From Bigelowiella natans CCMP2755 (taxonomy: Eukaryota > Protista > Cercozoa), in contig ADNK01001313.1 of assembly GCA_000320545.1 (NCBI GenBank), forward strand, positions 1 through 64,000: a stretch of 64,000 bases of DNA. Reading direction: 5' to 3'. A program made the translations under genes and the position numbers. The notes below the pieces were generated by a model. The model had not been told where the DNA came from. It saw only the letters and a list, made by a program, of their open reading frames with translations, and did not search any database. This document shows, one piece after another, positions 1 to 13,074 of this stretch; within the stretch, counting starts at the first letter, position 1, and the number at the start of each line of letters is the position of its first letter.

Positions 1-245
1 AAGTCGTAGAATATACATCCTATATTTCTCTTTCTCTTTCTCGGTATATGCTGTGATAGCGATGAGAGGAGAGGCCGCATTTTTACTCGAGAAATAAGAC
101 TGACGTCCTCCATTGAAAATGCACCGCCCCCCCCCCCCCCAAATAATAAGGGTGGTAGGGAAGACATGAACCGGGAGTGCGTGTGCTGACGGGTCTTCAT
201 TGCTACCCCCCCCCTCCCCCTTTCCCTCCCTCTCCCCACTACAGG

Positions 246-2383
246 TGGCACAGTCGTTGAAAGAAGCTGAAGAGAGCCTGACCGAATGGGATCTTAAGGT
301 GATGATGGTGGCAGTGCTGCTGCTGCTGCTGCTGTTGTTGTTGTTGTTGTTGTTGATGATGATGATGATTGATGCCCCCCTACTGAATCGAATTGCTAAT
401 ATACAGGTCGGTGATGGTGATTGTGGAGCTACGTTTAAGAGGGGGGCCGAGGCAGCTCTTGCTGATATGGATGGGTCCGTGCATCGTGTAGTAGTAGCAG
501 TAGTAGTAGTAGTAATAGTAGTAGCTGAAAACACGCTGCTACTCGTATATATCACTACACACTCTCTCTCACTCACACACTCACTCACTCACATGACTAT
601 ACACGCACGATATAGAAGCATAACTTAAAAAACTGCTGCTCCGAATTCGTGGTTCATTCCCAGCTTAGCAGCCCGTGAATGTGTGGTGTTTTTGTTTGTA
701 AGACACGACCGCACTGCTACTTCATATCACTTAGAAGTGAGGATGCTCTTTCTTATCGTCCCGCCGCTCACGCAATGCCCTTGTGCTATCACTGCTACTT
801 CGACTGCTGCTGCTGCTGCTGCTGCGGCCTTTTGAGTGACTGAATCTTCGTTGTTCTGTTGTTTGCTGCTTCGGCTTCATCGATCATGTGGTTTTCGACG
901 AGAAGGTATCCACTCAACTCTATTCCAGACACGTTGGAGTCTATTGCCAAGTCCGTTGCAAGGGTGAGTCATGATGAGAGAGATCGAGAGGAGGAGGAGG
1001 AGGAGGAGGATGCGATGATGATGCGATGATGATGCGATGATTGCGGCAGCAGCTTTTGAATGCACATGTACAGTCTCATATGTCACACGCATGTAAAATA
1101 ATTTATATATACGTGTGTGTATGTGATGGTTCCGTTGGATCTCTGAGAATATTAGCGTTGACTTCTTCGCACCCCCCCCCCCTCGTTCCTCTCCCCCCCC
1201 ACACACACTAGAGCATGGGTGGTACAAGCGGAGCACTCTACCAAATATTTCTGCTATCCCTGTGCGCTACAACGCGCCAGCAAGAGAAGAAGGAGGGGGC
1301 AGACTCCTCATCTTCCCTGTCACATCTCGCATTTGCGTTTGATGAAGCTATCAGCAAGATCGCTTCCAGCGGTGGGGCTACGGAGGGTAAGAGAATGGAG
1401 CAAACGGGATAGAGGGGGGGGGGGGCTGGGAGAAGGGTTAGAGTGATCATCGTAGATATAAATGCCGTACGTACTTCTATTACCAAGAGGCCACGATGTG
1501 GTTCTGCTGGCCGCCTACCCATGCTTCTGCAACTTGCTTGATCGCCATCCTGCAGCTGTCATGGTGGTGATAGAATGATGGCTATTTGGCGCTAGTTGAT
1601 GATGGCGTTCACGATGAGGGAAAGGGGGGGGGTGTTGATGATAGTGGTGGTTTGTGGCAGGTGACCGGACGATGCTCGATGCTTTGATTCCGGCAAGTAG
1701 GAGCCTCCAGCAATCATCACAGCTGGAGAGGGAACTTCTCCCTGCATTAGAGTTGGCCGTTCTAGCAGCGGAGGTACTGAATCAATTATCATCTTCGTCC
1801 TCCCCCCCATTTTGGTCTTTCACCCGCCTCGTACACAAGCTAATACACATCTCCACTCTTCTCGTGTTTGCACGTGTATATGGGAGTTCTGCTAGGGCTT
1901 TCGAGCTTAGAATCGAGTTGATTTCTCTCTTTCTCTCTCTCTCTCTCTTTCACTCTCCTACGTGTGTGATTGCGTGTGTGTATTTGCGTGTTTGTGTGTG
2001 GTATGCGGAATGCCATAGTGCGGGGCAGAGGCAACAAAGGAGATGGACGCACGGGCAGGAAGGTGATGATGATACTTTGAGACTCCTCGCACTCTCTCAT
2101 GATCAGTAGCTGGCTGCATAAGTGACAGCTTCATCATTCCTAGTTACTTCTGCAACTACCTGTCCCTGTATACAGTACCTGCCTTCCAGTCGTCTCATAT
2201 TACGCTTTCTACCCCTTCCCCCACCGACCGCCCTCTCCCCCTCATTCCAGGTCGAATTATGTGCCTGAAGCTGTTCTGCGGCAAACGCCTGATCCTGGAG
2301 CAAAGGTAACAGTAGCTGTGGCGAGGGGTATGCATCTTGGCGCGAACAATGCTACTGAAACCGTCGAGGAAGGGAAGTTCTAG
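246..2383 (+). CDS. Dihydroxyacetone kinase/triokinase, C-terminal DhaL (DAK2) part; multi-exon, 5' end outside window
   Basis: Exons encode LTEWDLKV|GDGDCGATFKRGAEA, GGTSGALYQIF, ISKIASSGGATEG|DRTMLDALIPA, and a last exon from ~2251 SNYVPEAVLRQTPDPGAK with TAG at 2381-2383. These are DhaL motifs (GDGDCG, GGTSG, DRTMLDAL, PDPGA). Confidence 0.9.
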
Positions 2384-3270: not shown

Positions 3271-3294
3271 TGATTACCTTGATGCTTCATTTGC

Positions 3295-6200
3295 TATGAA
3301 GTTGCTGAGACGCTTCCTGGTTGCTGAAAACAACTACCTCCGCGTCCCCACGGGGAACTTGGCCTTGATTTTTTCCTTGACTGCTTGCTTATTATTTGCA
3401 TTTTTGGAGTACTATCTTCGCACTCCTGGTGCTAGCGTATTAAACACATATCAAAGCCTATTGAGTTAGGCAAAAATGGATAACTACATTATGTGCCCAA
3501 GCTGTACGTGTTTTCCAAGCTGGTATTCCGTTCCAGATCTGTGTTAAATAGCATGTAAACAAAGCAGGCAGCAAAGCATTTTACCTATCATTTTAGCATA
3601 CCTCGTCTCGTTTAATACTTCCCGAAAGCATCTTGCTAAGTGGTGATAAGATTCCTGATTTCTCTATGTGATCACCACAATGTGCATATGCTTGTGCCCC
3701 CAGCTGAAATATACGAGAAACAATTTGATACTCGTCTTTTAATTTACATGTGGTGCAAGATACCACGGAATTAGATTCGAGTCTTAAGGGTCCGAAAGTA
3801 ATTGTGACACCATCAGCAAAATGCCCGCTTATCACACTTCCTTCATCCACTATTACACGTCGGCCGATCTGTTTGGAAAAATCCACATAAAACTACAATT
3901 GAATATTTTGTAAAAATAATATTATGTTCACCCGAAGGTATCTGTAATCATATTTTGGAATGCTGAGTAACAAAGCACTCAACGAAACCTGTGTGAACGT
4001 AATTAGTTCAACAAAGATTCAGCACCCACCCCTATGATTTTTATATACCTTTGCACCCATCATCAAGCTGAAAATGTTTACGAACACCGTCCCAGCCTTT
4101 TGTGGGATGCATTAGGATACGCTTTACCATTATGAAACAATAGTATACCATAGGAATCAGAAAAAATTGAGCTGTAGAGCTGGTATATCCAGATGCCTGA
4201 CTCCACCTTATTAACAAACGAGATGATACTAATATTTCGGATCAGTTTTACACAACACCGCAAGGACCTAAGGAGAAAGCTGGTGTTTTCCGTTATTGAT
4301 AACTCTTTTGTTGACTGTTGAGGGCATGCTCCAACCTACATGGATGCATTTTATATCTATATCTTGGGAAGTTGAATCTGTAATGAATTACCAGAATAGC
4401 ATTTATGAGTATTGAGTGCAGAACAATAGTCCAAACCCTGACAAACAAAACCAACAAATTATAGAACTGTTCTAAGTGATGCTACAAAGTCGTCTATTCT
4501 GAATTACCATAGAAGTGAATACAAAGTAAAAGCCATAACTCTGATATTATCATCTTTTATGTAGCTGTCTATTTCGTATGAAACTTCGTACACGGCCCAT
4601 ATTCCAACGTAACGTACACAATGCTGTATCAAACTTGCAAATAAATCTGCAATCTTGCTGCCCATGTTGCATCCTGCCCTTGCCGATTTTTGTTTTTCAA
4701 TTTGCTTTAAAGCCTCAGTGCGACGACGAAGCCTTTTATCACCTAGCACAACAGTCTCTTTTTCGATCGTCAAGGGGGTTTCGATGTCTCCTTTTACATG
4801 AGTATACCATCCGACTGCCGCACCCTCCTCCATGATCACATTTCCACTGATTACACTATTCAAACCAATGGAACACCCATCGCCTACAATTATCTTTCCA
4901 CGGATGCACCCTCTAGGGTTGCATGGGTCGTTTGCTTTTGGTTGCAAAGAGCAGATTGATATGAAACAGTAATCACCGATTTCAACTAGATGTGAATCCT
5001 ACATAAGTTAACCCACACTCTAAATTCGCAAAATTGACTATTGTCAAAAGGATTCGTTCTACCTCTGGATGAACATCTTTAAAATATATAGGCATAGAGC
5101 TCCACCCAATTTTCATTCCCAACATTCTAGTAAGTTGAATTTAGTCAAATATAAAATATAACTGGTGTATATCCATACCTCTGGTAGAAGTTAAAGACTG
5201 GCCACCAGTAGGCAAGCATTACGAAGAAGACGTAATAAACAGTGATGATATGAAGCCTCTGTAACCACCATCGTCGCCATTTTGTAAAGGCATTCACCGA
5301 ATGTGAGCCTGCTTTTATGTGACCCGCTAATATCCTAATAGTTCGGGCGGAATTTCTGACTTCAACGCGAAATGTAAGAACATTTTATGTTGACATTACC
5401 ACTTTGATATGATAGTAAAAATTGGAATCAAAGATAGCATCGAGAGCACGCGGAAAGTATTGAAAACAAGGTTGAAGTATCTGAGAGAAGTCGTTCAACA
5501 CAAAGAAGGGAATAATCAGTAACATTATGGATTTCGATAGTCATTTCTATACCGAAGATTGACAATCAAAGCATCAGCTCGCTGGTTCTCTGCGAATGGT
5601 TGCAGGTCTCTCAGAGCAAATGGATCAATCCACCAGAAAAGCCAAACTCCAGGGACACTCAAAAGGTTGAGAATCTGTACATCAGCGATTCAAAACTAAG
5701 ACATATTACAGAAGAATCATCATCAAGTTATTGTCCAACACCTGCGGGAGTACAAAGGCTGACAAAACCTGTAGAAATGGAAATATTAGAAATATGTTCA
5801 GTATCGGTACATAATACCTAATATGGTCGAAACCTTCATAATTTGAAGCAATGAGCTCTCGTAACAGCAACTAGGATTACTTTCAAGTTGCTTCGAGTAC
5901 GAATCTATGGATACTATCTTGTTCCGACGCAAGTTCAAAGCTTTGAAATCAGTTCCATTAAGGGACGATTTTTCATCGCCGTTGTTGCCTCGGCTTCCTT
6001 TCCAATTCCCAACCTGACGAAGGGGATTACCAACCCTGGACAAAATTATTATTTGTTAATCCCCCAATTTGTCCTTTTGGTGCTGATTTTCATCAAATAT
6101 TTGTATTTTTACCATGTAGACGATGGAGGGAGAACCACATGAGGGGGCACATGGCCAAATGCATGAATTCTCACATTATCTTCAAGGACGGAACCATGTT

Positions 6201-9200
6201 CTATCAATGTTTTGTCTCCTATGGTACAGCGGCTTCCGATGCGAATATGCTCTAGAATCTGGTAAAAACCACAGCATTCACATATCTTTAAATACAGACA
6301 AAGATATTAGAGTTTGATGCCGTCACACACCAATTCCCGTGGGGTTATGGATCTATTTAGAAGGCGCCCCTCAACAGTGCATCCCTTGCCAATAGTCACG
6401 AGATCTGGTTCCCGGAGAAAGGTACTTAGCTGAACGCATGCAATTATATTAAACAGGATAGAAGAAGTCGACAATTTGGTAAATCAGAGCAACAGCTTAC
6501 CGTTATTCCAGACAGGGGCACATGAGCTCCAAGGAGCCGATAAAAAAAGTTGAGAAACAAAGTATCGATTACAGCTACTCCAATCAAAGCCTGAAATATA
6601 CTCTTTAAATGCCCTAGTTTGCTTATATCATCAACATGAAAGTTTGATCCACCTCCCATGTCGCAAGCAATCGATCAACGTACCACCAGCGCAGCCAGAA
6701 CCATCCATATCTAAAATATCTTAGCTAAGTAGATGAAATACAACATCTTCATTCTAGAGTGCTTGTAAGATACTGACAATGGGTGCCGTCCGGGAGAGTA
6801 TCGGCCAATAACAATCCATTTTACAAGGATCGTCAGTAACGTGAAGCTTATTCCCCAGACTGGAATGGAAAAAACTGCCATGAATCCATTTACAGCAGCT
6901 TCATCATATATTCCTACTGATAATCTCGAAAAAGGTTCTGGGAGATCCGAAACGCGTCGAGTGAAGTGAAACCTTTAGCCCCAAAAAAAAATTACAACTC
7001 AATTTCTGAGAATCAATGAACAGCACTTTTCATGAATATGTTGTTTTAATCATACGCTGGAATGGCTGCTGCGGCACCAAGGAAAAATAATGAAAGCACT
7101 CCGATGGCTTGGAAGATGTGACGAAGAAGGGGTTGCAGTCCATGTTCTTTCTGGTTAACCATAACAGACACATGTGTTGAAAAAGACATGTTTCTGCTTC
7201 GAGCTGCAGAGAGAGAAGGAGATGCGCCTGGTTGCAGCCCTCGACTTATATTAGATGTACGAAAATTTGGGGAAGCAATATGAGACACTCCACCACGAGC
7301 CCCTGCTGTAGGCGTTGTCATGGAACTTATAAATTTAAACATCTTTTCGCCGCCATGGTTGCTATGATGACTTCCACAATTTAAAGCTACAGGAGAGAAC
7401 AGGCTTGGTTCGTTCACCTATATTTTAGGTAAGAAATCATTTGATATTTATTTAAGAAATTGTATATAAACTTCACCTCCTGTTGTGTTTTTCGACGAAA
7501 GCTTGAAGATCTCTTAAATCCATTCCGTTTATTCTCTAAACATTTTTGAATCAGGTACGAAACATCAAGATCTGCTAGAAATGTTGACCTGAACGAATGC
7601 TCTGCCGTGCCATATCAACATTTCCATCCTCTAACAACAATTTGTGGACCATTTCTTCGGAGAGAACGCATGCTCCGGGTATCTGCGGATCTCTTGGAAT
7701 ATCAACCGTTGCTTCTATCCAATCATTCGTTTCGGTTACACTACAGAAACTTTTACAAAGACTTGAGACTACAGATTTTAAACAGTTTGGAGACAACTGA
7801 AGAAGAATTAGATCAGACTCAAACTGAATTCCAAATGTATGCCGTAGTCCTCCCGATATCTCGACCAGCTTTATTGAGTCAATAATGCTCCCAAATTCAT
7901 TATTCCTATGCAGGAGCCAAGTTATTTTAAATAAAAATTTGTGAAATGTGAAACAAGTTGGAATAGTCTGTGATATATGCAAGCTATTTCTATAATCATT
8001 TATCTCATTTTAACCAATAAGATACTCATGATACCTACCCCATCTCTTTCCATTTGAATTCAGGGCCGATTGCCTTAGCGAGAGCCTTTTCGAAAGTGGT
8101 AGGACCCTTTACCTTTCCAAAATAGTCTTCCTGACCATCATCAAGTAATCTCACTTCTGAATCAAAATCTTGGTCTTCCGTTCTCGAGCCAGAAGTTCCT
8201 TTTGAGAGCCAAAATTTGTATTTAAGAGTTTTTGACGAGTATAAACGTTTGGTTTCGGATCTGCGTAGCTTGCCACTGGAGGTTTTGGGGATTGATTTTG
8301 ATTTTATCAGTACTACATCGGATATGTTTACCCCCGATGCAAGGGTAATTGCTAATTTGATATTCGAAGCGATTTCTTGAAAACCAAGATCTAGTTTTTT
8401 AAGTTCACTTTTGGAGCGAATTTCTGATACAACTACAGCGTGCTCAGATCCGTTCTTGGACACAGAGAAAACGACTGTACAACCTGGGCGCACACCAGGT
8501 ACAGTGTCAACTGATGATTCTAGATCTCGTGGAGAGTAATTTCGCCCGCGAATTATTATTAGATCCTTCTTTCGAGAGACGAAATATAACCTATCTGCTT
8601 CCATATATCCTATATCCCCAGTGCGGAGCCAACATCCCCCATTTTCTTTTTCTTTCGAGTCAAAAATCCCAGGAGAGCTTGCAATAATACCTTTAAAGAC
8701 TTTTCGGGTTTTATCTTGGTTTCCCCAGTATCCTAGGGCCACGGAACGTGACTGCAGCCATATTTCGCCTTCTTGACCATCTCCAACGACTTGACAAGTA
8801 TCAGGGTCTACAATTCGGCATCTCACTTGAGCGCGAGTTTCAGAATCGAAAACACCGCAACAAACCCGTCGTGGATCTCTCTTTGAGTAACACCTTTCTG
8901 GATGGCAATGATCTGCATTTATGGTTAGAGTATGCTCTGCCATACCATAGAAACTCATAATTATATTCTTGCGCAATCCATATTTTGCAAAATATTTTTC
9001 AAACTTCTCGAAAGTTTCGCGCTGATTCTCTTCGCCGCCTGAGCCTATGAGATCTAACTCTTTCAGAGAAAATCCATCAGGAACTGGTCGGTTATGCCAT
9101 TTTCTCACAACCAAATCGAAGGCAAAATTAGGAGCTGATGAGGAGTTGCAGTTGTATCTCCATGCACTATGCAGCCAGACGGATGGAGAACGTAAAAATG

Positions 9201-10453
9201 AAAACGGGCTCATGAAATGCCCTCTACCTCCCATGTACAGTATTTGCAGGTAGGCTGCAATCAATCCCATATCGTGATACTGTGGGACCCAATTCAGTGC
9301 TCGTATGTCATAGAAGGAGATTTCGGTATTCTTTTGCAGAGCTCGATACCGTCTTTGTCCGCACAAGTTGTTGTATTTTATATTATGGATCAGATTTGTA
9401 TGAGAAACCATTACACCCTTTATCACGTACAGATAAATAATGAATAAGTGGTGTTATAAATCACATGGTTGAAATCTTACTTTCGGATCGCCTGTGGACC
9501 CACTAGTGTATTGGAGAAATGCTAAATCCGGGTGAGGCTCAGGACCAACGTTGCTAGGAGGAAGTGTCGCCGATGCATTTGGATGACCTATATTTGAATT
9601 AGTTAACAAAGTAGGACTAGTAGAGATTCAAAGGTACCAAGTTTGATTTTGTCCGTATTTACAAATCTGATACTTGGCCAGTCATCCCCCAGTTTAATTT
9701 TCATCTTCCACACATGACGCGTAAAATCCCTGATAAATATTTAGTTTAAGTGGTTTCTTATTATCTATCACCGAAAGGGTACCTATGGGAGAGCACTAGT
9801 CGGGCTTGAGAGTTATCTATAATGTGGGTCATCTTTTTTACGCTACATAATAATATTCATGAGATATAAGTAGATGCGGGATAAATTCGAAGTGAAACTG
9901 TAAACCTATACGAAAGTCTTGCAGGGTTGGGAGGGTATATCGGTACGGGAACAATTCCAGCCACGAGGCATCCCAGAAACGCCTTTTTTGTAAATTAATA
10001 TGGAATCTTATTTCAAGATTCGGTACATAACATTGCACAGCGTACCTGAATAAAGTCTAGGCTAAACGTATAACATAGTACGACTCGTTCTCCAGGTTTG
10101 ATTTTGAAGTCATCTTGGAGATGTGTAGCGACCATGTTGGCCTGATTCCATACTTGTAAATAGCTATATTCTTTGACTAGTTTTCCGTCATCGTCCAGCC
10201 AAGCATACAGTAGACTATCACCTTTCTTTTCTACATTGCTCTTAAATTTTTCAATAAATTCTGTCCTCTTGCAATGTTTGCGCGGGCCAAGTGAAGAAAG
10301 ATTTATTGTCGACTTGTGCTCCACTGTAGCACTGTTATGTGTATTTGTTTTTGTGAGCAAATTTAATACTGTTCCTGGTCGATCCTCCGTCTCCTTCTCA
10401 TCAGCTCCTTTAACGAAATCATTGTAGTTGCTGCTTGCGCTGGTAACCACCAT
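3295..10453 (-). CDS. Single-module NRPS-like synthetase: fatty acyl-AMP ligase (FAAL) + ACP + Pls/PosA-type C-terminal region (TM segments alternating with three hexapeptide/acyltransferase-like domains); multi-exon
   Basis: FAAL motifs: FLQYTSGSTGDPK|GVMVSH, WVPQYHDMGLI, SAPNFAF, FYGMAEHTL, GEIWLQSRSVALGYW, LRTGDIG, KKDLIIIRGRN, IPKTSSGKLRR. ACP: IDSIKLVEISGGLRHTFGIQF (~7800-7900). Then three repeats of TM + KWIVIGRYSPGRHP / ILAGHIKAGSH-type segments, FYRLLGAHV / MLGMKIG, and hexapeptide runs (LVTIGKGCTVE, IRIGSRCTIGDKTLIEHGSVLEDN...W|VGNP, IIVGDGCSIGLNSVISGNVIMEEGAAVG, QIGRRVIVDEGSVISGH...WNGIPA). Ends are approximate. Confidence 0.85.
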
Positions 10454-11949
10454 CTTACTTGGGGAAGGGCCCGTTTTAGCAAGCAACGATGGAGGAGATG
10501 ACTCTGCATGGATGCAGTACCATCGTGAGATTGAGAAAACGATGTGCCGTCGTCGCACTAATTTGCGCTACCACATAGTAATCGATAGTCACTGCGATTT
10601 CTTTGATGCGACAACATCGAATGCCGTTAAGCGGCAAACACAACCAACAAGAGTGCGAGAGAAACCTGCCATTTAGTTACCCGCGACAATAACTTCGATG
10701 CGTCGCGTTGGGAATGTGATCGGCGCTTTGAGAGCAAGTGGGAAGAAACTACCGCCGTCACAAAAATTGTTCGAAAGTGTTCTTTAATCCAAATCTGCTT
10801 GACAATTTCAATGGCATTTACTCCTTGTATATACTTGCGACAAGTGATGAATCCAGCACAATCGTGCTTGTGCCAATCGGACTGATTCATTCGATGGGGC
10901 CATCGCCTTGTGAACAAACTGCACCATTTGTGCACATTGGAAACGCTTCATTCATTCATTCATTCATGCGCAGCAGGACAAAAAAGATGTCGATGAATTT
11001 TTGATCGAGGTGTGGCTACCTCTCTGAGCTCTGCTGGACAAGCGAGGAGCGACGCACTTCGTCGGGAGTTTGCTGCACACACGAACCTTCAACGATGAGA
11101 CGCGGTGCCGGATTCAGCTCTCGACAGAAGCTCATCCCGGATTCCAAGCGCTCACAAGAGGGCCACATTGGTCACCCTCTGAGTTCCATGCTAGCATGGT
11201 GATGAGGTTGCAAACTGGTGCTGCTGCAAAGGTGAGAATCAGGACAAGAAGCCAGTCTAGCAGTGTGTTGGGCGAAACTGCAAGAAGCTGGATCGCACTC
11301 GCGTCTCACAGCCAGCCAGGTCAATCAGACGCAGGCACAAGGGCATCATCGTCACCCATGGCAACAATTTCACCATCCACCTTGTTGACGATGCTAGGAT
11401 GGCTGCTTTATGATCTTTGCCACCAACCTTGTGCATCGCGAGATCAATTACAGAACGTCAAGAAGTTTCTCGCAACGCGCTGTCTGGCTTTGGGGCTAGC
11501 TAGGTATTGCAACAGTCATTTGCAGTGAGAGTTCGGGCCACGTCTAGACGTGTGCTTGCGAACTAGCTCCAATCATGTTGTCAGAAAGAAATGCTAGATC
11601 GACTGAAGTCAATTGCATGGTGGCTTTCATGCGTTGGTTCTAGCCAGCAAGCATGCTACGTGCTCCAGTCTAGCAGTGTTGTTGACCTCTGTCTCTCCAG
11701 CTAGCCAGGTTTACTGCTATTTCGTCACATGCTAGTGCGTGTGCGCACACACATGCGCAGAATGCGACACTTGCGTCGGAAGACACTCAAGCTAGCAAGA
11801 GTGCGTGATATCTAGATATGTGTATGCTGCAACACAACAGCAAAGTTTTTCATGGATTATTTAGAGGATAATAGGCTGGAAAAAGTGTATTTTGCTGGAC
11901 ATATTATCAAGGTCCTCCTGCTGATAATTATTCTGCAGTCTTCCACATC

Positions 11950-12610
11950 TCAAACCGGCTCTATTTTCCTAAGTTCCTTCACAGCGCGATCAGAATCTTT
12001 TAAATTTCCCGTGTTAAGTGTACTCTTTGGCTCAAGTAAGATGATCTCACATTCATCCTTATACAACATTAAGTGTTCGAATAGTGAGACAGCGTACTAT
12101 GGGTTATTCATCTGTTATCGTTAGCTGAAAGTAGATTAGTTGTGTGTGTTGTTATACCTCGCACGTGGGGCAGTGCTCTACTTTGGCTGGTATTACAATG
12201 AATTCACCTTCTCTCACTACCTCTACCCGCTCCTTTCCTTCCTGTGCAGGATCTCTAATCTTCATCCTAAGAGTGCCCTTGGTGACTAGGAAAAGCTCGT
12301 CCTCCGTTTCGTGATGATGCCAGATGAAATCTCCCTGGATCTTCGCCAGCTTGATGTGCATGTCGTTCACCTCGCCCGCGACGCGAGGCGACCAGTGGTC
12401 TGAAAACTGTGCAAACGCTGAGGACAGCGTGACCTTCCGAATTACTTGTGGAGAGGCGATCTTGCCGCCGTGCTCTACACAAAGAGTCCGACGTAGAAGA
12501 GGGCCTGCTGCCTGAGAAGGAGGAGCCCTGCAACTTGATCGAGCATTCCTGCTGGGGCAGAGCAAAGATCGACGCGCAGCATGGAGAAGTCTAGGCACTC
12601 TCGACAGCAT
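11950..12610 (-). CDS. Cupin-domain protein (bacterial cupin_2/ManC-like type) with predicted mitochondrial targeting peptide; 2 exons
   Basis: Exon 1 (12610-12158): Arg/Ser/Leu-rich leader MLSRVPRLLHAARRSLL, then FSDHWSPRVAGEVND...GDFIWHHHETEDELFLV...GEFIVIPAKVEHCP. Exon 2: DECEIILLEPKSTLNTG...*. Both cupin metal-binding motifs are present. Confidence 0.88.
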
Positions 12611-13074
12611 CCTCCTCGGAGACAAAAGATGTGATTCCGTTAGAGGGGGACAGCGAGTATCTGTCTCGGAATAGAAAGTGGAGTTAGCTGCCGACGACTT
12701 AGTTCCGGAATGCCACGTGCAGATTGAAGCAAAAATATGATGCGATTTAAAGGAAACGACAACGTTTTCCCGCACTTAGAGCGTATTCGGCACAAAGGTA
12801 GCTATTCTTTTCATCACAATTGGGCGGCTTTTCACTGCTGCGACAAATAAATCCCGTTGTTTTCACGAGCCCATTCATCGCTCCCCATCACCGACTAGTA
12901 TTGGGTTGATTTGGATTTCACACCCAGATCCTCGCTCACTGATACGGCAGAAGTGGGGCATCCATCACACTGGGTTGTTGGACTGTAATTTGTTTTTCCT
13001 AAAGAGTTTCAACTTCATGCAATGTCGAAAATCAAGTTGATCTATTTGCTGCTACTGCTGCTGCTGCTTCTCAG

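What the first reader, a model, noticed from the sequence alone, without database searches (positions are those of the whole stretch)
3295..10453. FAAL-ACP fused to a Pls/PosA-type membrane polymerase module: candidate eukaryotic lipid-polymer/acyl-transfer synthetase
Seen: one spliced gene encodes an adenylation domain with FAAL signatures (WVPQYHDMGLI, APNFAF, YGMAEHTL, IPKTSSGKLRR), an ACP with the DS phosphopantetheine site, and three TM-plus-hexapeptide units each preceded by KW..G..-type motifs. Known: epsilon-poly-L-lysine synthetase (Pls) and PosA use A-T plus TM segments and three tandem acyltransferase-like domains to polymerise amino acids at the membrane, while FAALs load fatty acids onto ACPs. 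Inference: this enzyme would feed a fatty (possibly hydroxy- or amino-) acyl unit into a Pls-like condensing/export module. The product could be a polyester/polyamide or an acylated surface polymer. No KS, canonical C, TE or reductase domain is visible, so the membrane module is probably the release or polymerising step.
Basis: partly seen in the sequence, partly recalled or inferred. Interest (0 to 1): 0.85.

Follow-up and report, generated by a model that had tools for sequence, protein, structure and literature searches.

The report
FAAL-ACP enzyme with Pls-like membrane module
This is a real, expressed 30-exon gene of the alga Bigelowiella natans for a membrane enzyme that activates a fatty acid, holds it on its own carrier domain and probably passes it on through a membrane module distantly related to the one bacteria use to make polylysine; similar uncharacterised genes exist in diatoms and land plants.

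Summary
On the minus strand, 10453 to 3294, lies one 30-exon gene. All 29 introns are GT-AG, the ORF of 1743 aa has no internal stop, and it is transcribed and spliced. It encodes a FAAL-type adenylation domain, a carrier domain with the DS serine, and three repeats of two membrane helices plus a left-handed beta-helix (LbH).

The C-terminal module is a distant homologue of the Pls/PosA terminal domain. Paralogues score E 1e-43 on TIGR02353 but only about 150 bits against a cut-off of 423. The adenylation domain is of the fatty-acid type, not the amino-acid type. I therefore read it as a variant that works like Pls/PosA, not a member.

It is not unique. B. natans has at least three more FAAL copies. 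The same architecture occurs in Amorphochlora, the diatom Seminavis and many land plants, all uncharacterised. The three bacterial relatives I fetched carry amino-acid A domains.

The most likely function is CoA-independent loading of a fatty acid, then transfer from the ACP to an acceptor nucleophile by the LbH module. This is inferred, not shown.

Two caveats apply. One intron (7055-6973) was not seen bridged in the RNA tables shown. The joined protein was not searched; all searches ran exon by exon.

The parts
3294..10453 (-). Whole coding sequence: 30 exons, 29 GT-AG introns of 52-133 nt, 1743 aa, no internal stop. There is an in-frame stop at 10568-10570 upstream of the ATG.
   Evidence: Fifteen introns were seen as RNA joints. 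Fourteen were inferred from GT-AG ends, reading frame, RNA contig lengths and the public partial model P0001.
8209..10210 (-). FAAL-type adenylation domain (model aa about 82-640; exons 1-6). It carries the motifs SGSTGDPK, WVPQYHDMGLI, APNFAF, YGMAEHTL and IPKTSSGKLRR.
   Evidence: On exon 6, NCBIfam PRK05850 fatty-acid--AMP ligase gives E 8e-79 (265 bits), against FadD at 60 bits and AA-adenyl-dom at 62 bits. The top PDB hits are FAALs: 7r7e, FadD23, 3kxw, FadD32. Pfam AMP-binding and AMP-dom_DIP2-like also hit.
7716..8115 (-). Acyl carrier domain spanning the exon 6/7 junction. The phosphopantetheine serine is Ser707, codon at 7875-7877, in GSIIDSIKLVEI.
   Evidence: The serine is invariant in alignment A4. 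The A4 profile hits ACPs in the PDB at E 1.8e-06. The single-exon Pfam PP-binding score is only 16.3 bits against a cut-off of 20.8.
7056..7535 (-). Low-complexity linker (exon 8, 7535-7477, and the first part of exon 9), followed by the first membrane helix (TM1).
   Evidence: The 59-nt exon 8 fits the 64 unplaced letters in RNA contigs between the pieces 7589-7904 and 7054-7412.
5972..7141 (-). Repeat unit 1: TM1 (6960-7120, across intron 7055-6973), TM2 (6819-6887), KWIVIGRY (6798-6821), core helices, and LbH 1 (6035-6429).
   Evidence: Hydropathy and motifs and the repeat alignment. Hexapep E 5e-6 and LpxD/NeuD hits on 6112-6306, and TIGR02353 E 0.0055 on 6714-6974. The bacterial Pls/PosA profile gives 4e-6 and 7e-6 on exons 10 and 14.
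4717..5860 (-). Repeat unit 2: TM3 (5633-5842, including an inferred 27-nt microexon at 5768-5742), TM4 (5334-5470), KWILAGHI (5316-5404), and LbH 2 (4747-4998).
   Evidence: The total exon length matches RNA contig X5 record 7 exactly, at 447 letters. Hexapep and GlmU/LpxD-type hits lie on 4507-4998. Exon 19 scores E 4e-5 on the bacterial profile.
3297..4560 (-). Repeat unit 3: TM5 (4318-4545), TM6 (3956-4172), a degenerate KW motif, LbH 3 (3426-3868) and a basic 45-aa tail. It holds His1628 (3821-3823, SGHFADG), the counterpart of the near-invariant family His in the bacterial consensus QTHLFEDR, and the WxGxP motif (IWNGIPAWK).
   Evidence: All eight introns of this part were seen as RNA joints.
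6973..7055 (-). Intron 9, the only junction between the FAAL-ACP half and the module half that was not seen bridged. All three transcriptome assemblies break their contig here.
   Evidence: One search gives the contig ends at 7054 and about 6972. One search shows GTATGA...AAAG ends and an open frame across the junction. Paralogue sequence is contiguous across it.

Best explanation
The gene encodes a single 1743-aa membrane protein with the layout FAAL - ACP - three repeats of (2 TM helices + LbH).

Shown:
- The gene is intact, spliced and transcribed.
- The N-terminal domain is of the fatty acyl-AMP ligase type.
- A carrier domain with the conserved serine follows it.
- The C-terminal 830 residues are three tandem repeats homologous to the terminal membrane domain of Pls/PosA-type synthetases.

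Inferred mechanism:
1. The FAAL adenylates a fatty or similar aliphatic acid and loads it, without CoA, on the phosphopantetheine of its own ACP on the cytosolic side. The protein has no signal peptide.
2. The ACP delivers the thioester to the membrane-anchored pseudo-trimeric LbH module.
3. That module transfers the acyl group to an amine or hydroxyl of a free or membrane-bound acceptor and so releases the product. This parallels Pls/PosA, which transfers carrier-bound lysine or ornithine to a free amine, and LpxA/LpxD, which use acyl-ACP.
4. A near-invariant His in unit 3 (His1628 here) is my candidate for the catalytic base.

A plain fatty acid has no nucleophile, so one transfer per loading is more likely than polymerisation. 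The acceptor and the product are unknown.
For: Gene and transcript:
- The ORF stays open through 30 exons and all introns are GT-AG.
- Spliced RNA contigs from three studies join 8038-9349+, 7589-7904 and 7054-7412 in one contig, and about 6972 down to about 3190 in another.
- Depths of the two contigs are similar within each run: 429 and 576, 57 and 64, 746 and 861.

FAAL.

ACP.

Module:
- Three repeats are present.
- The window is colinear with paralogue P0002 from 10381 to 3503.
- On TIGR02353, P0002 scores 1e-43, P0003 1e-42 and P0050 2e-45.
- P0002 and P0050 hit bacterial Pls/PosA proteins at 4e-34 and 1.5e-36.
- A bacterial-only Pls/PosA profile hits exons 10, 14 and 19 of the window at 4e-6 to 4e-5.
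- The AF2 model of P0002:901-1833 has pTM 0.73 and shows three repeats of helix pair, two helices and beta-helix.
- Its Foldseek hits are serine, maltose and galactoside acetyltransferases, AntD N-acyltransferase and LpxA.
- His865 of that model's numbering is invariant in 16 and near-invariant in 24 family members. It is present in the window as SGHFADG.

Use as an off-loading domain: relatives carry the same module after PKS modules (P0214; B. natans C2875) and after FAAL plus FAD-oxidase (plants, P0009).

Background: PMC10522769 describes the PosA and Pls terminal domain as six TM helices in three pairs plus three LbH packed like sugar-nucleotide acyltransferases.
Against: - No biochemical datum exists for any FAAL-type member.
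- The joined protein of this gene was never scored. Per-exon matches to TIGR02353 are weak (best E 0.0055).
- Stand-in paralogues reach only about 150 bits against a cut-off of 423.
- The unit 3 KW motif is degenerate in this copy.
- The stretch after YGMAE, where FAALs carry their specific insertion, is 15 residues shorter than in the FAAL 7r7e.
- The exon 9/10 junction was not seen bridged in the rows shown.
- The role of the His as catalytic base is a guess from conservation alone.
Confidence: 0.6

Rival explanations
1. True Pls-like polymerase. The adenylation domain takes a bifunctional acid (omega-hydroxy, omega-amino or beta-amino fatty acid). The module condenses it iteratively into a polyester or polyamide that leaves through the membrane.
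For: The module is homologous to the only characterised members, which are iterative polymerases (PMC10522769). It has the same six-TM layout. Nothing tested here excludes a hydroxy- or amino-acyl substrate.
Against: The module is very divergent from the polymerases, at about 150 bits against 772 for a bacterial member. It forms a separate clade from them. The same module ends PKS-type proteins (P0214, C2875), where a release role fits better. FAALs as a class load plain fatty acids (PMC8460268).
Confidence: 0.15
2. The module is a non-catalytic membrane anchor, scaffold or exporter. The FAAL-ACP hands its acyl chain to a separate PKS, NRPS or acyltransferase in trans.
For: The unit 3 KW motif is lost in this copy. 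Scores sit below the family cut-off. B. natans has NRPS and PKS genes (locus L013). FAAL-ACP didomains commonly start lipopeptide and polyketide lines (PMC8460268).
Against: The family-wide invariant residues, including the unit 3 His and the WxGxP motifs, are kept in this gene. The fusion is conserved from chlorarachniophytes to land plants. All three LbH repeats are retained.
Confidence: 0.17
3. Two separate genes: a FAAL-ACP gene ending after the first TM helix, and a TM/LbH gene starting at exon 10.
For: Contigs of all three transcriptome assemblies end at 7054 and start at about 6972. Reading through intron 9 gives a stop after two codons.
Against: The intron has canonical GT...AG ends and an open frame across it. 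TM1 and TM2 of one repeat unit would be split between two genes. Paralogues C3248 and C230 carry the same stretch uninterrupted in one exon. Depths of the two contigs are similar. Run X5 gave four contigs: the two long ones cover both halves of the gene, and the other two were not displayed and could be a short bubble at the break. Nine joints and 71 pieces were not displayed at all.
Confidence: 0.04

Closest known systems
Epsilon-poly-L-lysine synthetase Pls (Streptomyces albulus) and delta-poly-L-ornithine synthetase PosA (Acinetobacter baumannii); NCBIfam TIGR02353 'Pls/PosA family'
   Same: The order is adenylation domain, carrier domain, then a terminal membrane module made of three pairs of TM helices and three tandem LbH repeats. 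There is no C, TE or R domain. Sequence homology of the module is significant: 1e-43 on paralogues, and colinear exon matches in the window.
   Different: The adenylation domain is FAAL-type, not amino-acid-type. The module scores about 150 bits against a cut-off of 423 and against 772 for a bacterial member. It falls outside the bacterial clade. Linkers are longer, and the protein has 1743 aa against about 1300. A plain fatty acyl substrate cannot be polymerised.
Uncharacterised FAAL-like multidomain proteins of land plants (e.g. Medicago truncatula 'AMP-binding enzyme' P0212; Acacia P0202), noted by Patil et al. 2021 (PMC8460268)
   Same: FAAL plus carrier domain plus a TIGR02353-like TM/LbH module, which scores 199-214 bits.
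   Different: Most plant proteins add an N-terminal FAD amine-oxidase/HemY-like domain. Their modules form a separate clade. The paper describes them as flanked by HemY and catalase or amino-acid-oxidase domains and does not mention a Pls-like module.
B. natans paralogue jgi/Bigna1/91948 (P0002), Amorphochlora amoebiformis GAB5353253.1 (P0003), and Seminavis robusta 'FadD21' proteins (P0193-P0195)
   Same: The same FAAL-ACP-module architecture. Identity with exon 6 is 51% and 42% for the first two. The modules group in the same clade.
   Different: These are paralogues or orthologues, not the same gene. P0003 has an extra N-terminal WW domain. In the diatom proteins the matches to my module profile and to TIGR02353 cover only about 340-490 residues.
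Acyl-ACP-dependent LbH acyltransferases LpxA and LpxD, and acyl-CoA LbH acetyltransferases (serine, maltose and galactoside acetyltransferases, AntD)
   Same: The left-handed beta-helix fold that works as a three-fold assembly, with an acyl thioester donor and an OH or NH2 acceptor.
   Different: Here the three beta-helices lie in one chain, are anchored by six TM helices, and are fused to their own loading enzyme and carrier.
FAAL-ACP loading didomains of lipopeptide and polyketide lines (e.g. mycosubtilin MycA, mycobacterial FadD32-Pks13)
   Same: CoA-independent activation of a fatty acid and loading on a fused or partner carrier (PMC8460268).
   Different: No KS or C domain follows. The chain ends in the Pls-like membrane module.

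Membership tests
Fatty acyl-AMP ligase (FAAL; NCBIfam NF004509/PRK05850, CDD cd05931) | ANL core motifs (SGSTGxPK, YGxxE, TGD, PKTxSGK) are intact. | tested here: met
   SGSTGDPK, YGMAEHTL, LRTGDIGY and IPKTSSGKLRR are present in exons 5-6.
Fatty acyl-AMP ligase (FAAL; NCBIfam NF004509/PRK05850, CDD cd05931) | Scores best against FAAL models and structures rather than acyl-CoA ligases or amino-acid A domains. | tested here: met
   Exon 6 scores 265 bits on PRK05850 and 236 on FadD21, against 60 on FadD (PRK08974) and 62 on TIGR01733. The top 12 PDB hits are FAALs.
Fatty acyl-AMP ligase (FAAL; NCBIfam NF004509/PRK05850, CDD cd05931) | Reaches the curated whole-protein cut-off (775 bits). | tested here: inconclusive
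   Only single exons were searched, and exon 6 alone cannot reach it. Full-length paralogue P0002 scores 268 bits and P0050 341 bits, both below the cut-off.
Fatty acyl-AMP ligase (FAAL; NCBIfam NF004509/PRK05850, CDD cd05931) | FAAL-specific insertion in the N-terminal domain. | tested here: inconclusive
   Exon 6 spends 232 residues on 207 positions of Pfam AMP-binding, an excess of 25. The stretch after YGMAE is 15 residues shorter than in FAAL 7r7e.
Fatty acyl-AMP ligase (FAAL; NCBIfam NF004509/PRK05850, CDD cd05931) | Makes acyl-AMP and loads holo-ACP but not CoA. | not testable with these tools
   This needs an enzyme assay.
Carrier protein (PP-binding, PF00550) | Serine in a (G)x(I/L/V)DS(I/L/M) motif at the start of helix II. 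| tested here: met
   GSIIDSIKLVEI is present, and the Ser is invariant in 8 relatives.
Carrier protein (PP-binding, PF00550) | Profile similarity to carrier proteins. | tested here: met
   The profile of A4, with the window exon as first row, hits ACPs in the PDB at E 1.8e-06. The exon alone scores only 16.3 bits against a cut-off of 20.8 and finds nothing by phmmer.
Pls/PosA family synthetase (NCBIfam TIGR02353 NRPS_term_dom) | Terminal module with six TM helices in three pairs and three tandem LbH repeats after an A-T pair. | tested here: met
   Hydropathy, repeat alignment and the AF2 model of paralogue P0002. The layout is as described in PMC10522769.
Pls/PosA family synthetase (NCBIfam TIGR02353 NRPS_term_dom) | Significant sequence similarity to the family profile. 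| tested here: met
   The window piece 6714-6974 gives E 0.0055. Exons 10, 14 and 19 give 4e-6 to 4e-5 on a bacterial-only profile. Colinear paralogue P0002 gives 1e-43.
Pls/PosA family synthetase (NCBIfam TIGR02353 NRPS_term_dom) | Score above the curated cut-off (423.1 bits). | tested here: not met
   Tested on the nearest full-length stand-ins: P0002 150, P0003 146 and P0050 156 bits, against 772 for bacterial P0153. The joined protein of this gene itself was not searched.
Pls/PosA family synthetase (NCBIfam TIGR02353 NRPS_term_dom) | Amino-acid-activating NRPS adenylation domain. | tested here: not met
   The A domain is FAAL-type. All three bacterial loci fetched have NRPS-type A domains and no FAAL match.
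Pls/PosA family synthetase (NCBIfam TIGR02353 NRPS_term_dom) | Makes an isopeptide homopolymer. | not testable with these tools
   This needs product analysis.
LbH (hexapeptide-repeat) acyltransferases | Hexapeptide repeats and a left-handed beta-helix fold. | tested here: met
   Pfam Hexapep gives E 5e-6 on 6112-6306 and 0.005 on 4507-4998, with NeuD and LpxD hits. Foldseek on the paralogue model finds LbH acyltransferases.
LbH (hexapeptide-repeat) acyltransferases | Catalytic histidine at a subunit interface. | tested here: inconclusive
   A near-invariant His in unit 3 is present. Its position in an active site was not examined.

The most novel reading that the evidence does not exclude
The FAAL-ACP-Pls-like proteins may be membrane polymerases for bifunctional fatty acids (omega-hydroxy or amino acids). 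They would build and export an aliphatic polyester or polyamide directly at the membrane. That would be a CoA-independent route to cutin-, suberin- or algaenan-like surface polymers, shared by algae and land plants.
Probability: 0.12. Interest if true: 0.9.

Novelty: new variant of a known kind. Interest (0 to 1): 0.6.

Why it matters
The terminal membrane domain of Pls/PosA is one of the least understood catalytic domains of non-ribosomal synthesis. The PDB copy I searched holds no structure of it.

This gene belongs to a eukaryotic branch in which the same module is fed by a fatty-acid loader, or in relatives by a PKS, instead of an amino-acid loader. Such a protein would be a self-contained, CoA-independent machine that puts a lipid chain on some acceptor at a membrane.

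The branch reaches crop plants such as Medicago, Daucus and a wild wheat (Triticum urartu). Their 'FAAL-like' proteins were flagged as being of unknown function (PMC8460268). That turns 'what do plant and algal FAALs do?' into a testable hypothesis: load the ACP, then look for an N- or O-acylated product that depends on the module.

A variant that performs one transfer per loading would also be a simpler system than the polymerases for working out how the module catalyses.

For the genome itself, the public model of this gene is a 516-aa FAAL fragment. The full gene is 1743 aa.

Tried and rejected
- **TIGR02353 in six frames on the whole genome.** It found five other loci but not this one, because the exons here are too short.
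- **Minimal-intron path search.** It gave open frames with wrong junctions: a 5-nt exon and a wrong frame in exon 2. I replaced it with junctions fixed by RNA contig lengths and the P0001 model.
- **Word-based protein search with the P0002 module.** It found only three proteins.
- **Exon 7 alone against the PDB.** It found nothing. A profile was needed.
- **Structure job with alignment A2.** I left out all plant rows and P0189, P0214 and P0252, and ran the rest as A3.
- **The search for related loci with A5.** It failed because no stretch was conserved enough. A6 worked and gave only three bacterial loci, all with NRPS-type A domains.
- **Paper searches.** Searches for TIGR02353, for FAAL with Bigelowiella, for polylysine synthetase with FAAL, and for Pls/PosA wording found no description of a FAAL-Pls fusion. 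This covers the held library only.
- **Neighbouring genes.** A cupin-domain gene at 12152-12775 and Dak2-like pieces at 200-2109 give no hint of a cluster.
- **Bacterial contamination.** Rejected: there are 29 spliceosomal introns, and the closest kin are eukaryotic.
- **Pseudogene.** Rejected: the ORF is intact and the gene is expressed.
- **Not done.** I ran no search, family scan or fold of the joined 1743-aa model. It was built only inside scripts, to check frame continuity, hydropathy and internal repeats.


Full report
**Organism and locus.** The window is contig C2424 of a 91.4-Mb assembly. Earlier notes of this scan name the organism as Bigelowiella natans. I checked this two ways. The best database hit of the largest exon is a 100% identical 516-aa UniParc entry. 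The second hit is jgi/Bigna1/91948, labelled B. natans. Residues 984-1833 of that protein map at 99.6% identity to contig C230 of the same assembly.

**Gene structure.**
- The coding strand is minus.
- Stop-to-stop pieces, tblastn with paralogues and the public partial model P0001 located the exons.
- I laid three transcriptome-type runs and one raw RNA-seq run on 3350-9349, 6000 letters. The contigs skip stretches whose ends read CT..AC on the plus strand, which is GT..AG on the minus strand. They therefore derive from spliced RNA.
- Fifteen joints were listed. Nine more joints and 71 more pieces were not displayed.
- I fixed the 14 remaining introns by three criteria: GT-AG ends, reading frame, and the exact number of letters the RNA contigs hold between listed pieces. 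One case is 447 letters between 5830 and 4997. Another is 64 letters between 7589 and 7412, which gives a 59-nt exon 8 whose donor GTGAA explains the 5-nt ambiguity.
- The result is 30 exons, 29 GT-AG introns of 52-133 nt and a 1743-aa ORF from the ATG at 10453 to a stop ending at 3294.
- An in-frame stop lies at 10568-10570. The contigs extend about 100-130 nt beyond the ATG, as computed from record lengths and the exon lengths.

**One gene or two.**
- One RNA contig per run holds the FAAL exon, the ACP exon, exon 8 and the first TM exon (8038-9349+, 7589-7904, 7054-7412).
- In run X5 another contig holds everything from about 6972 to about 3190. In X1 and X3 that stretch lies in two or more contigs.
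- All three runs break at intron 9 (7055-6973). I did not see that junction bridged.
- Against a two-gene reading: the intron has canonical ends and the frame is open across it. It separates TM1 from TM2 of one repeat unit. The paralogues carry the same stretch without interruption: C3248 in a 1131-aa open frame, and C230 in one exon. Contig depths on the two sides are similar.
- Run X5 gave only four contigs. The two long ones cover both halves of the gene. The other two were not displayed, and they could be a short bubble at the break.
- I put the two-gene reading at about 4%.

**N-terminal half.**
- Exon 6 (9417-8039) scores E 8e-79 on NCBIfam PRK05850 (fatty-acid--AMP ligase) and 1e-69 on FadD21. 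FadD and the amino-acid adenylation model reach only about 60 bits.
- Its PDB matches are FAALs throughout: 7r7e, FadD23, 3kxw, FadD32, FadD28.
- The FAAL-specific insertion is unresolved. There is a 25-residue excess over the Pfam profile, but the stretch is 15 residues shorter than in 7r7e.
- The carrier domain spans the exon 6/7 junction. Ser707 sits in GSIIDSIKLVEI and is invariant in relatives. The profile of that alignment finds acyl carrier proteins.
- A 4'-phosphopantetheinyl transferase match exists in the genome.
- There is no hydrophobic N-terminus, so the loading half should face the cytosol. This is inference.

**C-terminal half.**
- Hydropathy gives three pairs of membrane helices.
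- The three units align to each other in the same order of elements: TM pair, KW.(I/L).G, RWW, helix, N.F.R.LGA, pDLV.IG, hexapeptide coils, then W.G.P.
- Unit 3 has lost the KW motif.
- Exon-wise, Pfam Hexapep and LpxD/NeuD/GlmU-type models hit the beta-helix exons. TIGR02353 hits the KW exon at E 0.0055.
- A profile I built from 27 bacterial Pls/PosA proteins alone hits exons 10, 14 and 19 at 4e-6 to 4e-5.
- The stronger link is transitive. The window is colinear with paralogue P0002 from 10381 to 3503. P0002, Amorphochlora P0003 and P0050 score 1e-42 to 2e-45 on TIGR02353 and hit bacterial Pls/PosA proteins at 1e-34 to 1e-36.
- These scores (146-156 bits) are far below the curated cut-off of 423. 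A bacterial member scores 772.
- An AlphaFold2 model of P0002:901-1833 has pTM 0.73, a well-predicted core and disordered linkers. It shows three repeats of a long helix pair, two shorter helices and a beta-helix. This is the layout published for PosA (PMC10522769).
- Foldseek finds only LbH acyltransferases.
- The PDB copy holds no structure of the module.
- A His in unit 3 (bacterial consensus QTHLFEDR) is invariant in 16 and near-invariant in 24 family members. It is kept here as His1628.

**Distribution.**
- B. natans has further loci with the module. C3248, C1602 and C230 have FAAL. The N-terminal part at C2848 was not resolved. C2875 appears to be preceded by PKS-like KR and ACP motifs.
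- A profile of three FAAL-type proteins found the same architecture elsewhere. It occurs in Seminavis robusta ('FadD21'). It also occurs in many land plants (Acacia, Medicago, Daucus, Triticum, Cryptomeria and others), usually with an added N-terminal FAD amine-oxidase domain, and in several unnamed eukaryote-like contigs.
- Patil et al. 2021 (PMC8460268) noted plant FAAL-like proteins with unusual fusions but did not name a Pls-like module.
- I found no paper in the held library that describes the fusion.
- In a quick tree, the bacterial Pls/PosA modules, the chlorarachniophyte plus diatom-like modules, and the plant modules form three supported groups. The search was not finished, branches are long and the sample has 49 rows.
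- The three bacterial loci retrieved with the eukaryotic module all have NRPS-type A domains and no FAAL.
- The FAAL-type fusion therefore looks eukaryotic in my small sample.

**Mechanism.**
- Shown: the domain order, the motifs and the fold class.
- Inferred: the FAAL loads its own ACP without CoA. The ACP then presents the thioester to the pseudo-trimeric LbH module. The module passes the acyl group to an amine or hydroxyl acceptor and thereby releases it.
- This borrows from two known systems. Pls and PosA transfer a carrier-bound aminoacyl group to a free amine. LpxA and LpxD are LbH enzymes that take acyl-ACP.
- The module also ends PKS-type proteins, which fits a general off-loading role.
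- Polymerisation would need a bifunctional substrate, and I rate it lower.
- A purely structural or export role for the module is the other live rival.

**Limits.**
- The joined 1743-aa model was used only inside scripts, for frame check, hydropathy and repeat alignment. It was never sent to a search, family or fold tool. All searches of this gene were made exon by exon, by reference. Whole-protein scores for this gene are therefore missing, and paralogues stand in for them.
- No stretch was reported as human-like.

**Verdict.** The function is inferred. The gene is one member of an uncharacterised, mainly eukaryotic FAAL-loaded branch of the Pls/PosA-like enzymes, which makes it a new variant of a known kind and of moderate to high interest.

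Noticed in passing
G000 contigs C3248 (L009), C1602 (L010), C230 (L011), C2848 (L012): At least three further FAAL-ACP-module genes lie in the same genome. C3248 is 61% and C1602 49% identical in the FAAL exon, and C230 equals public protein jgi 91948. They have far fewer introns than this copy. C3248 carries ACP plus most of the module in one 1131-aa open frame.
   Followed up: partly
G000:C2875:138000-147999 (L013), plus strand: A Pls-like TM/LbH module here appears to be preceded by polyketide-synthase-like sequence: a KR-type motif and an ACP reading LGIDSLDFVE. The module may also end a PKS in this alga. P0214, from an unnamed eukaryote-like contig, has FAAL-KS-AT-KR-ACP followed by the module.
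   Followed up: partly
window 8260-10132: The only public protein model of this gene (UniParc UPI00043F564A, 516 aa) is a FAAL-only fragment. The ACP and the whole membrane module are missing from it.
   Followed up: yes
window 4438-4507: The contig of run X5 reads straight through this intron (piece 4390-4997), while X1 and X3 splice it out. This looks like intron retention in one data set. Retention would put a stop at 4504-4506.
   Followed up: partly
window 5742-5768: I infer a 27-nt microexon that encodes part of TM3.
   Followed up: partly
window 3350-3750: The raw-read RNA run X23 covers almost only the last 400 nt of the gene, with depth 38 falling to below 1. All first mates lie on the minus strand, as in a 3'-tag library. 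It says nothing about the 5' part.
   Followed up: no
P0202 residues 1546-1616 (Acacia) and many plant homologues: Pfam 'Catalase' hits of modest score (33 bits in P0202) lie inside the region I assign to the Pls-like module. The 'catalase domains' reported for plant FAAL-like proteins may be part of, or inserted in, this module.
   Followed up: no
window 12152-12775 (-) and 200-2109 (+): The flanking genes are a cupin-domain gene upstream and Dak2-like (dihydroxyacetone kinase) exons downstream. There is no sign of a functional cluster.
   Followed up: partly
P0003 residues 30-60 (Amorphochlora amoebiformis): The Amorphochlora homologue carries an N-terminal WW domain that the B. natans copies lack.
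   Followed up: no
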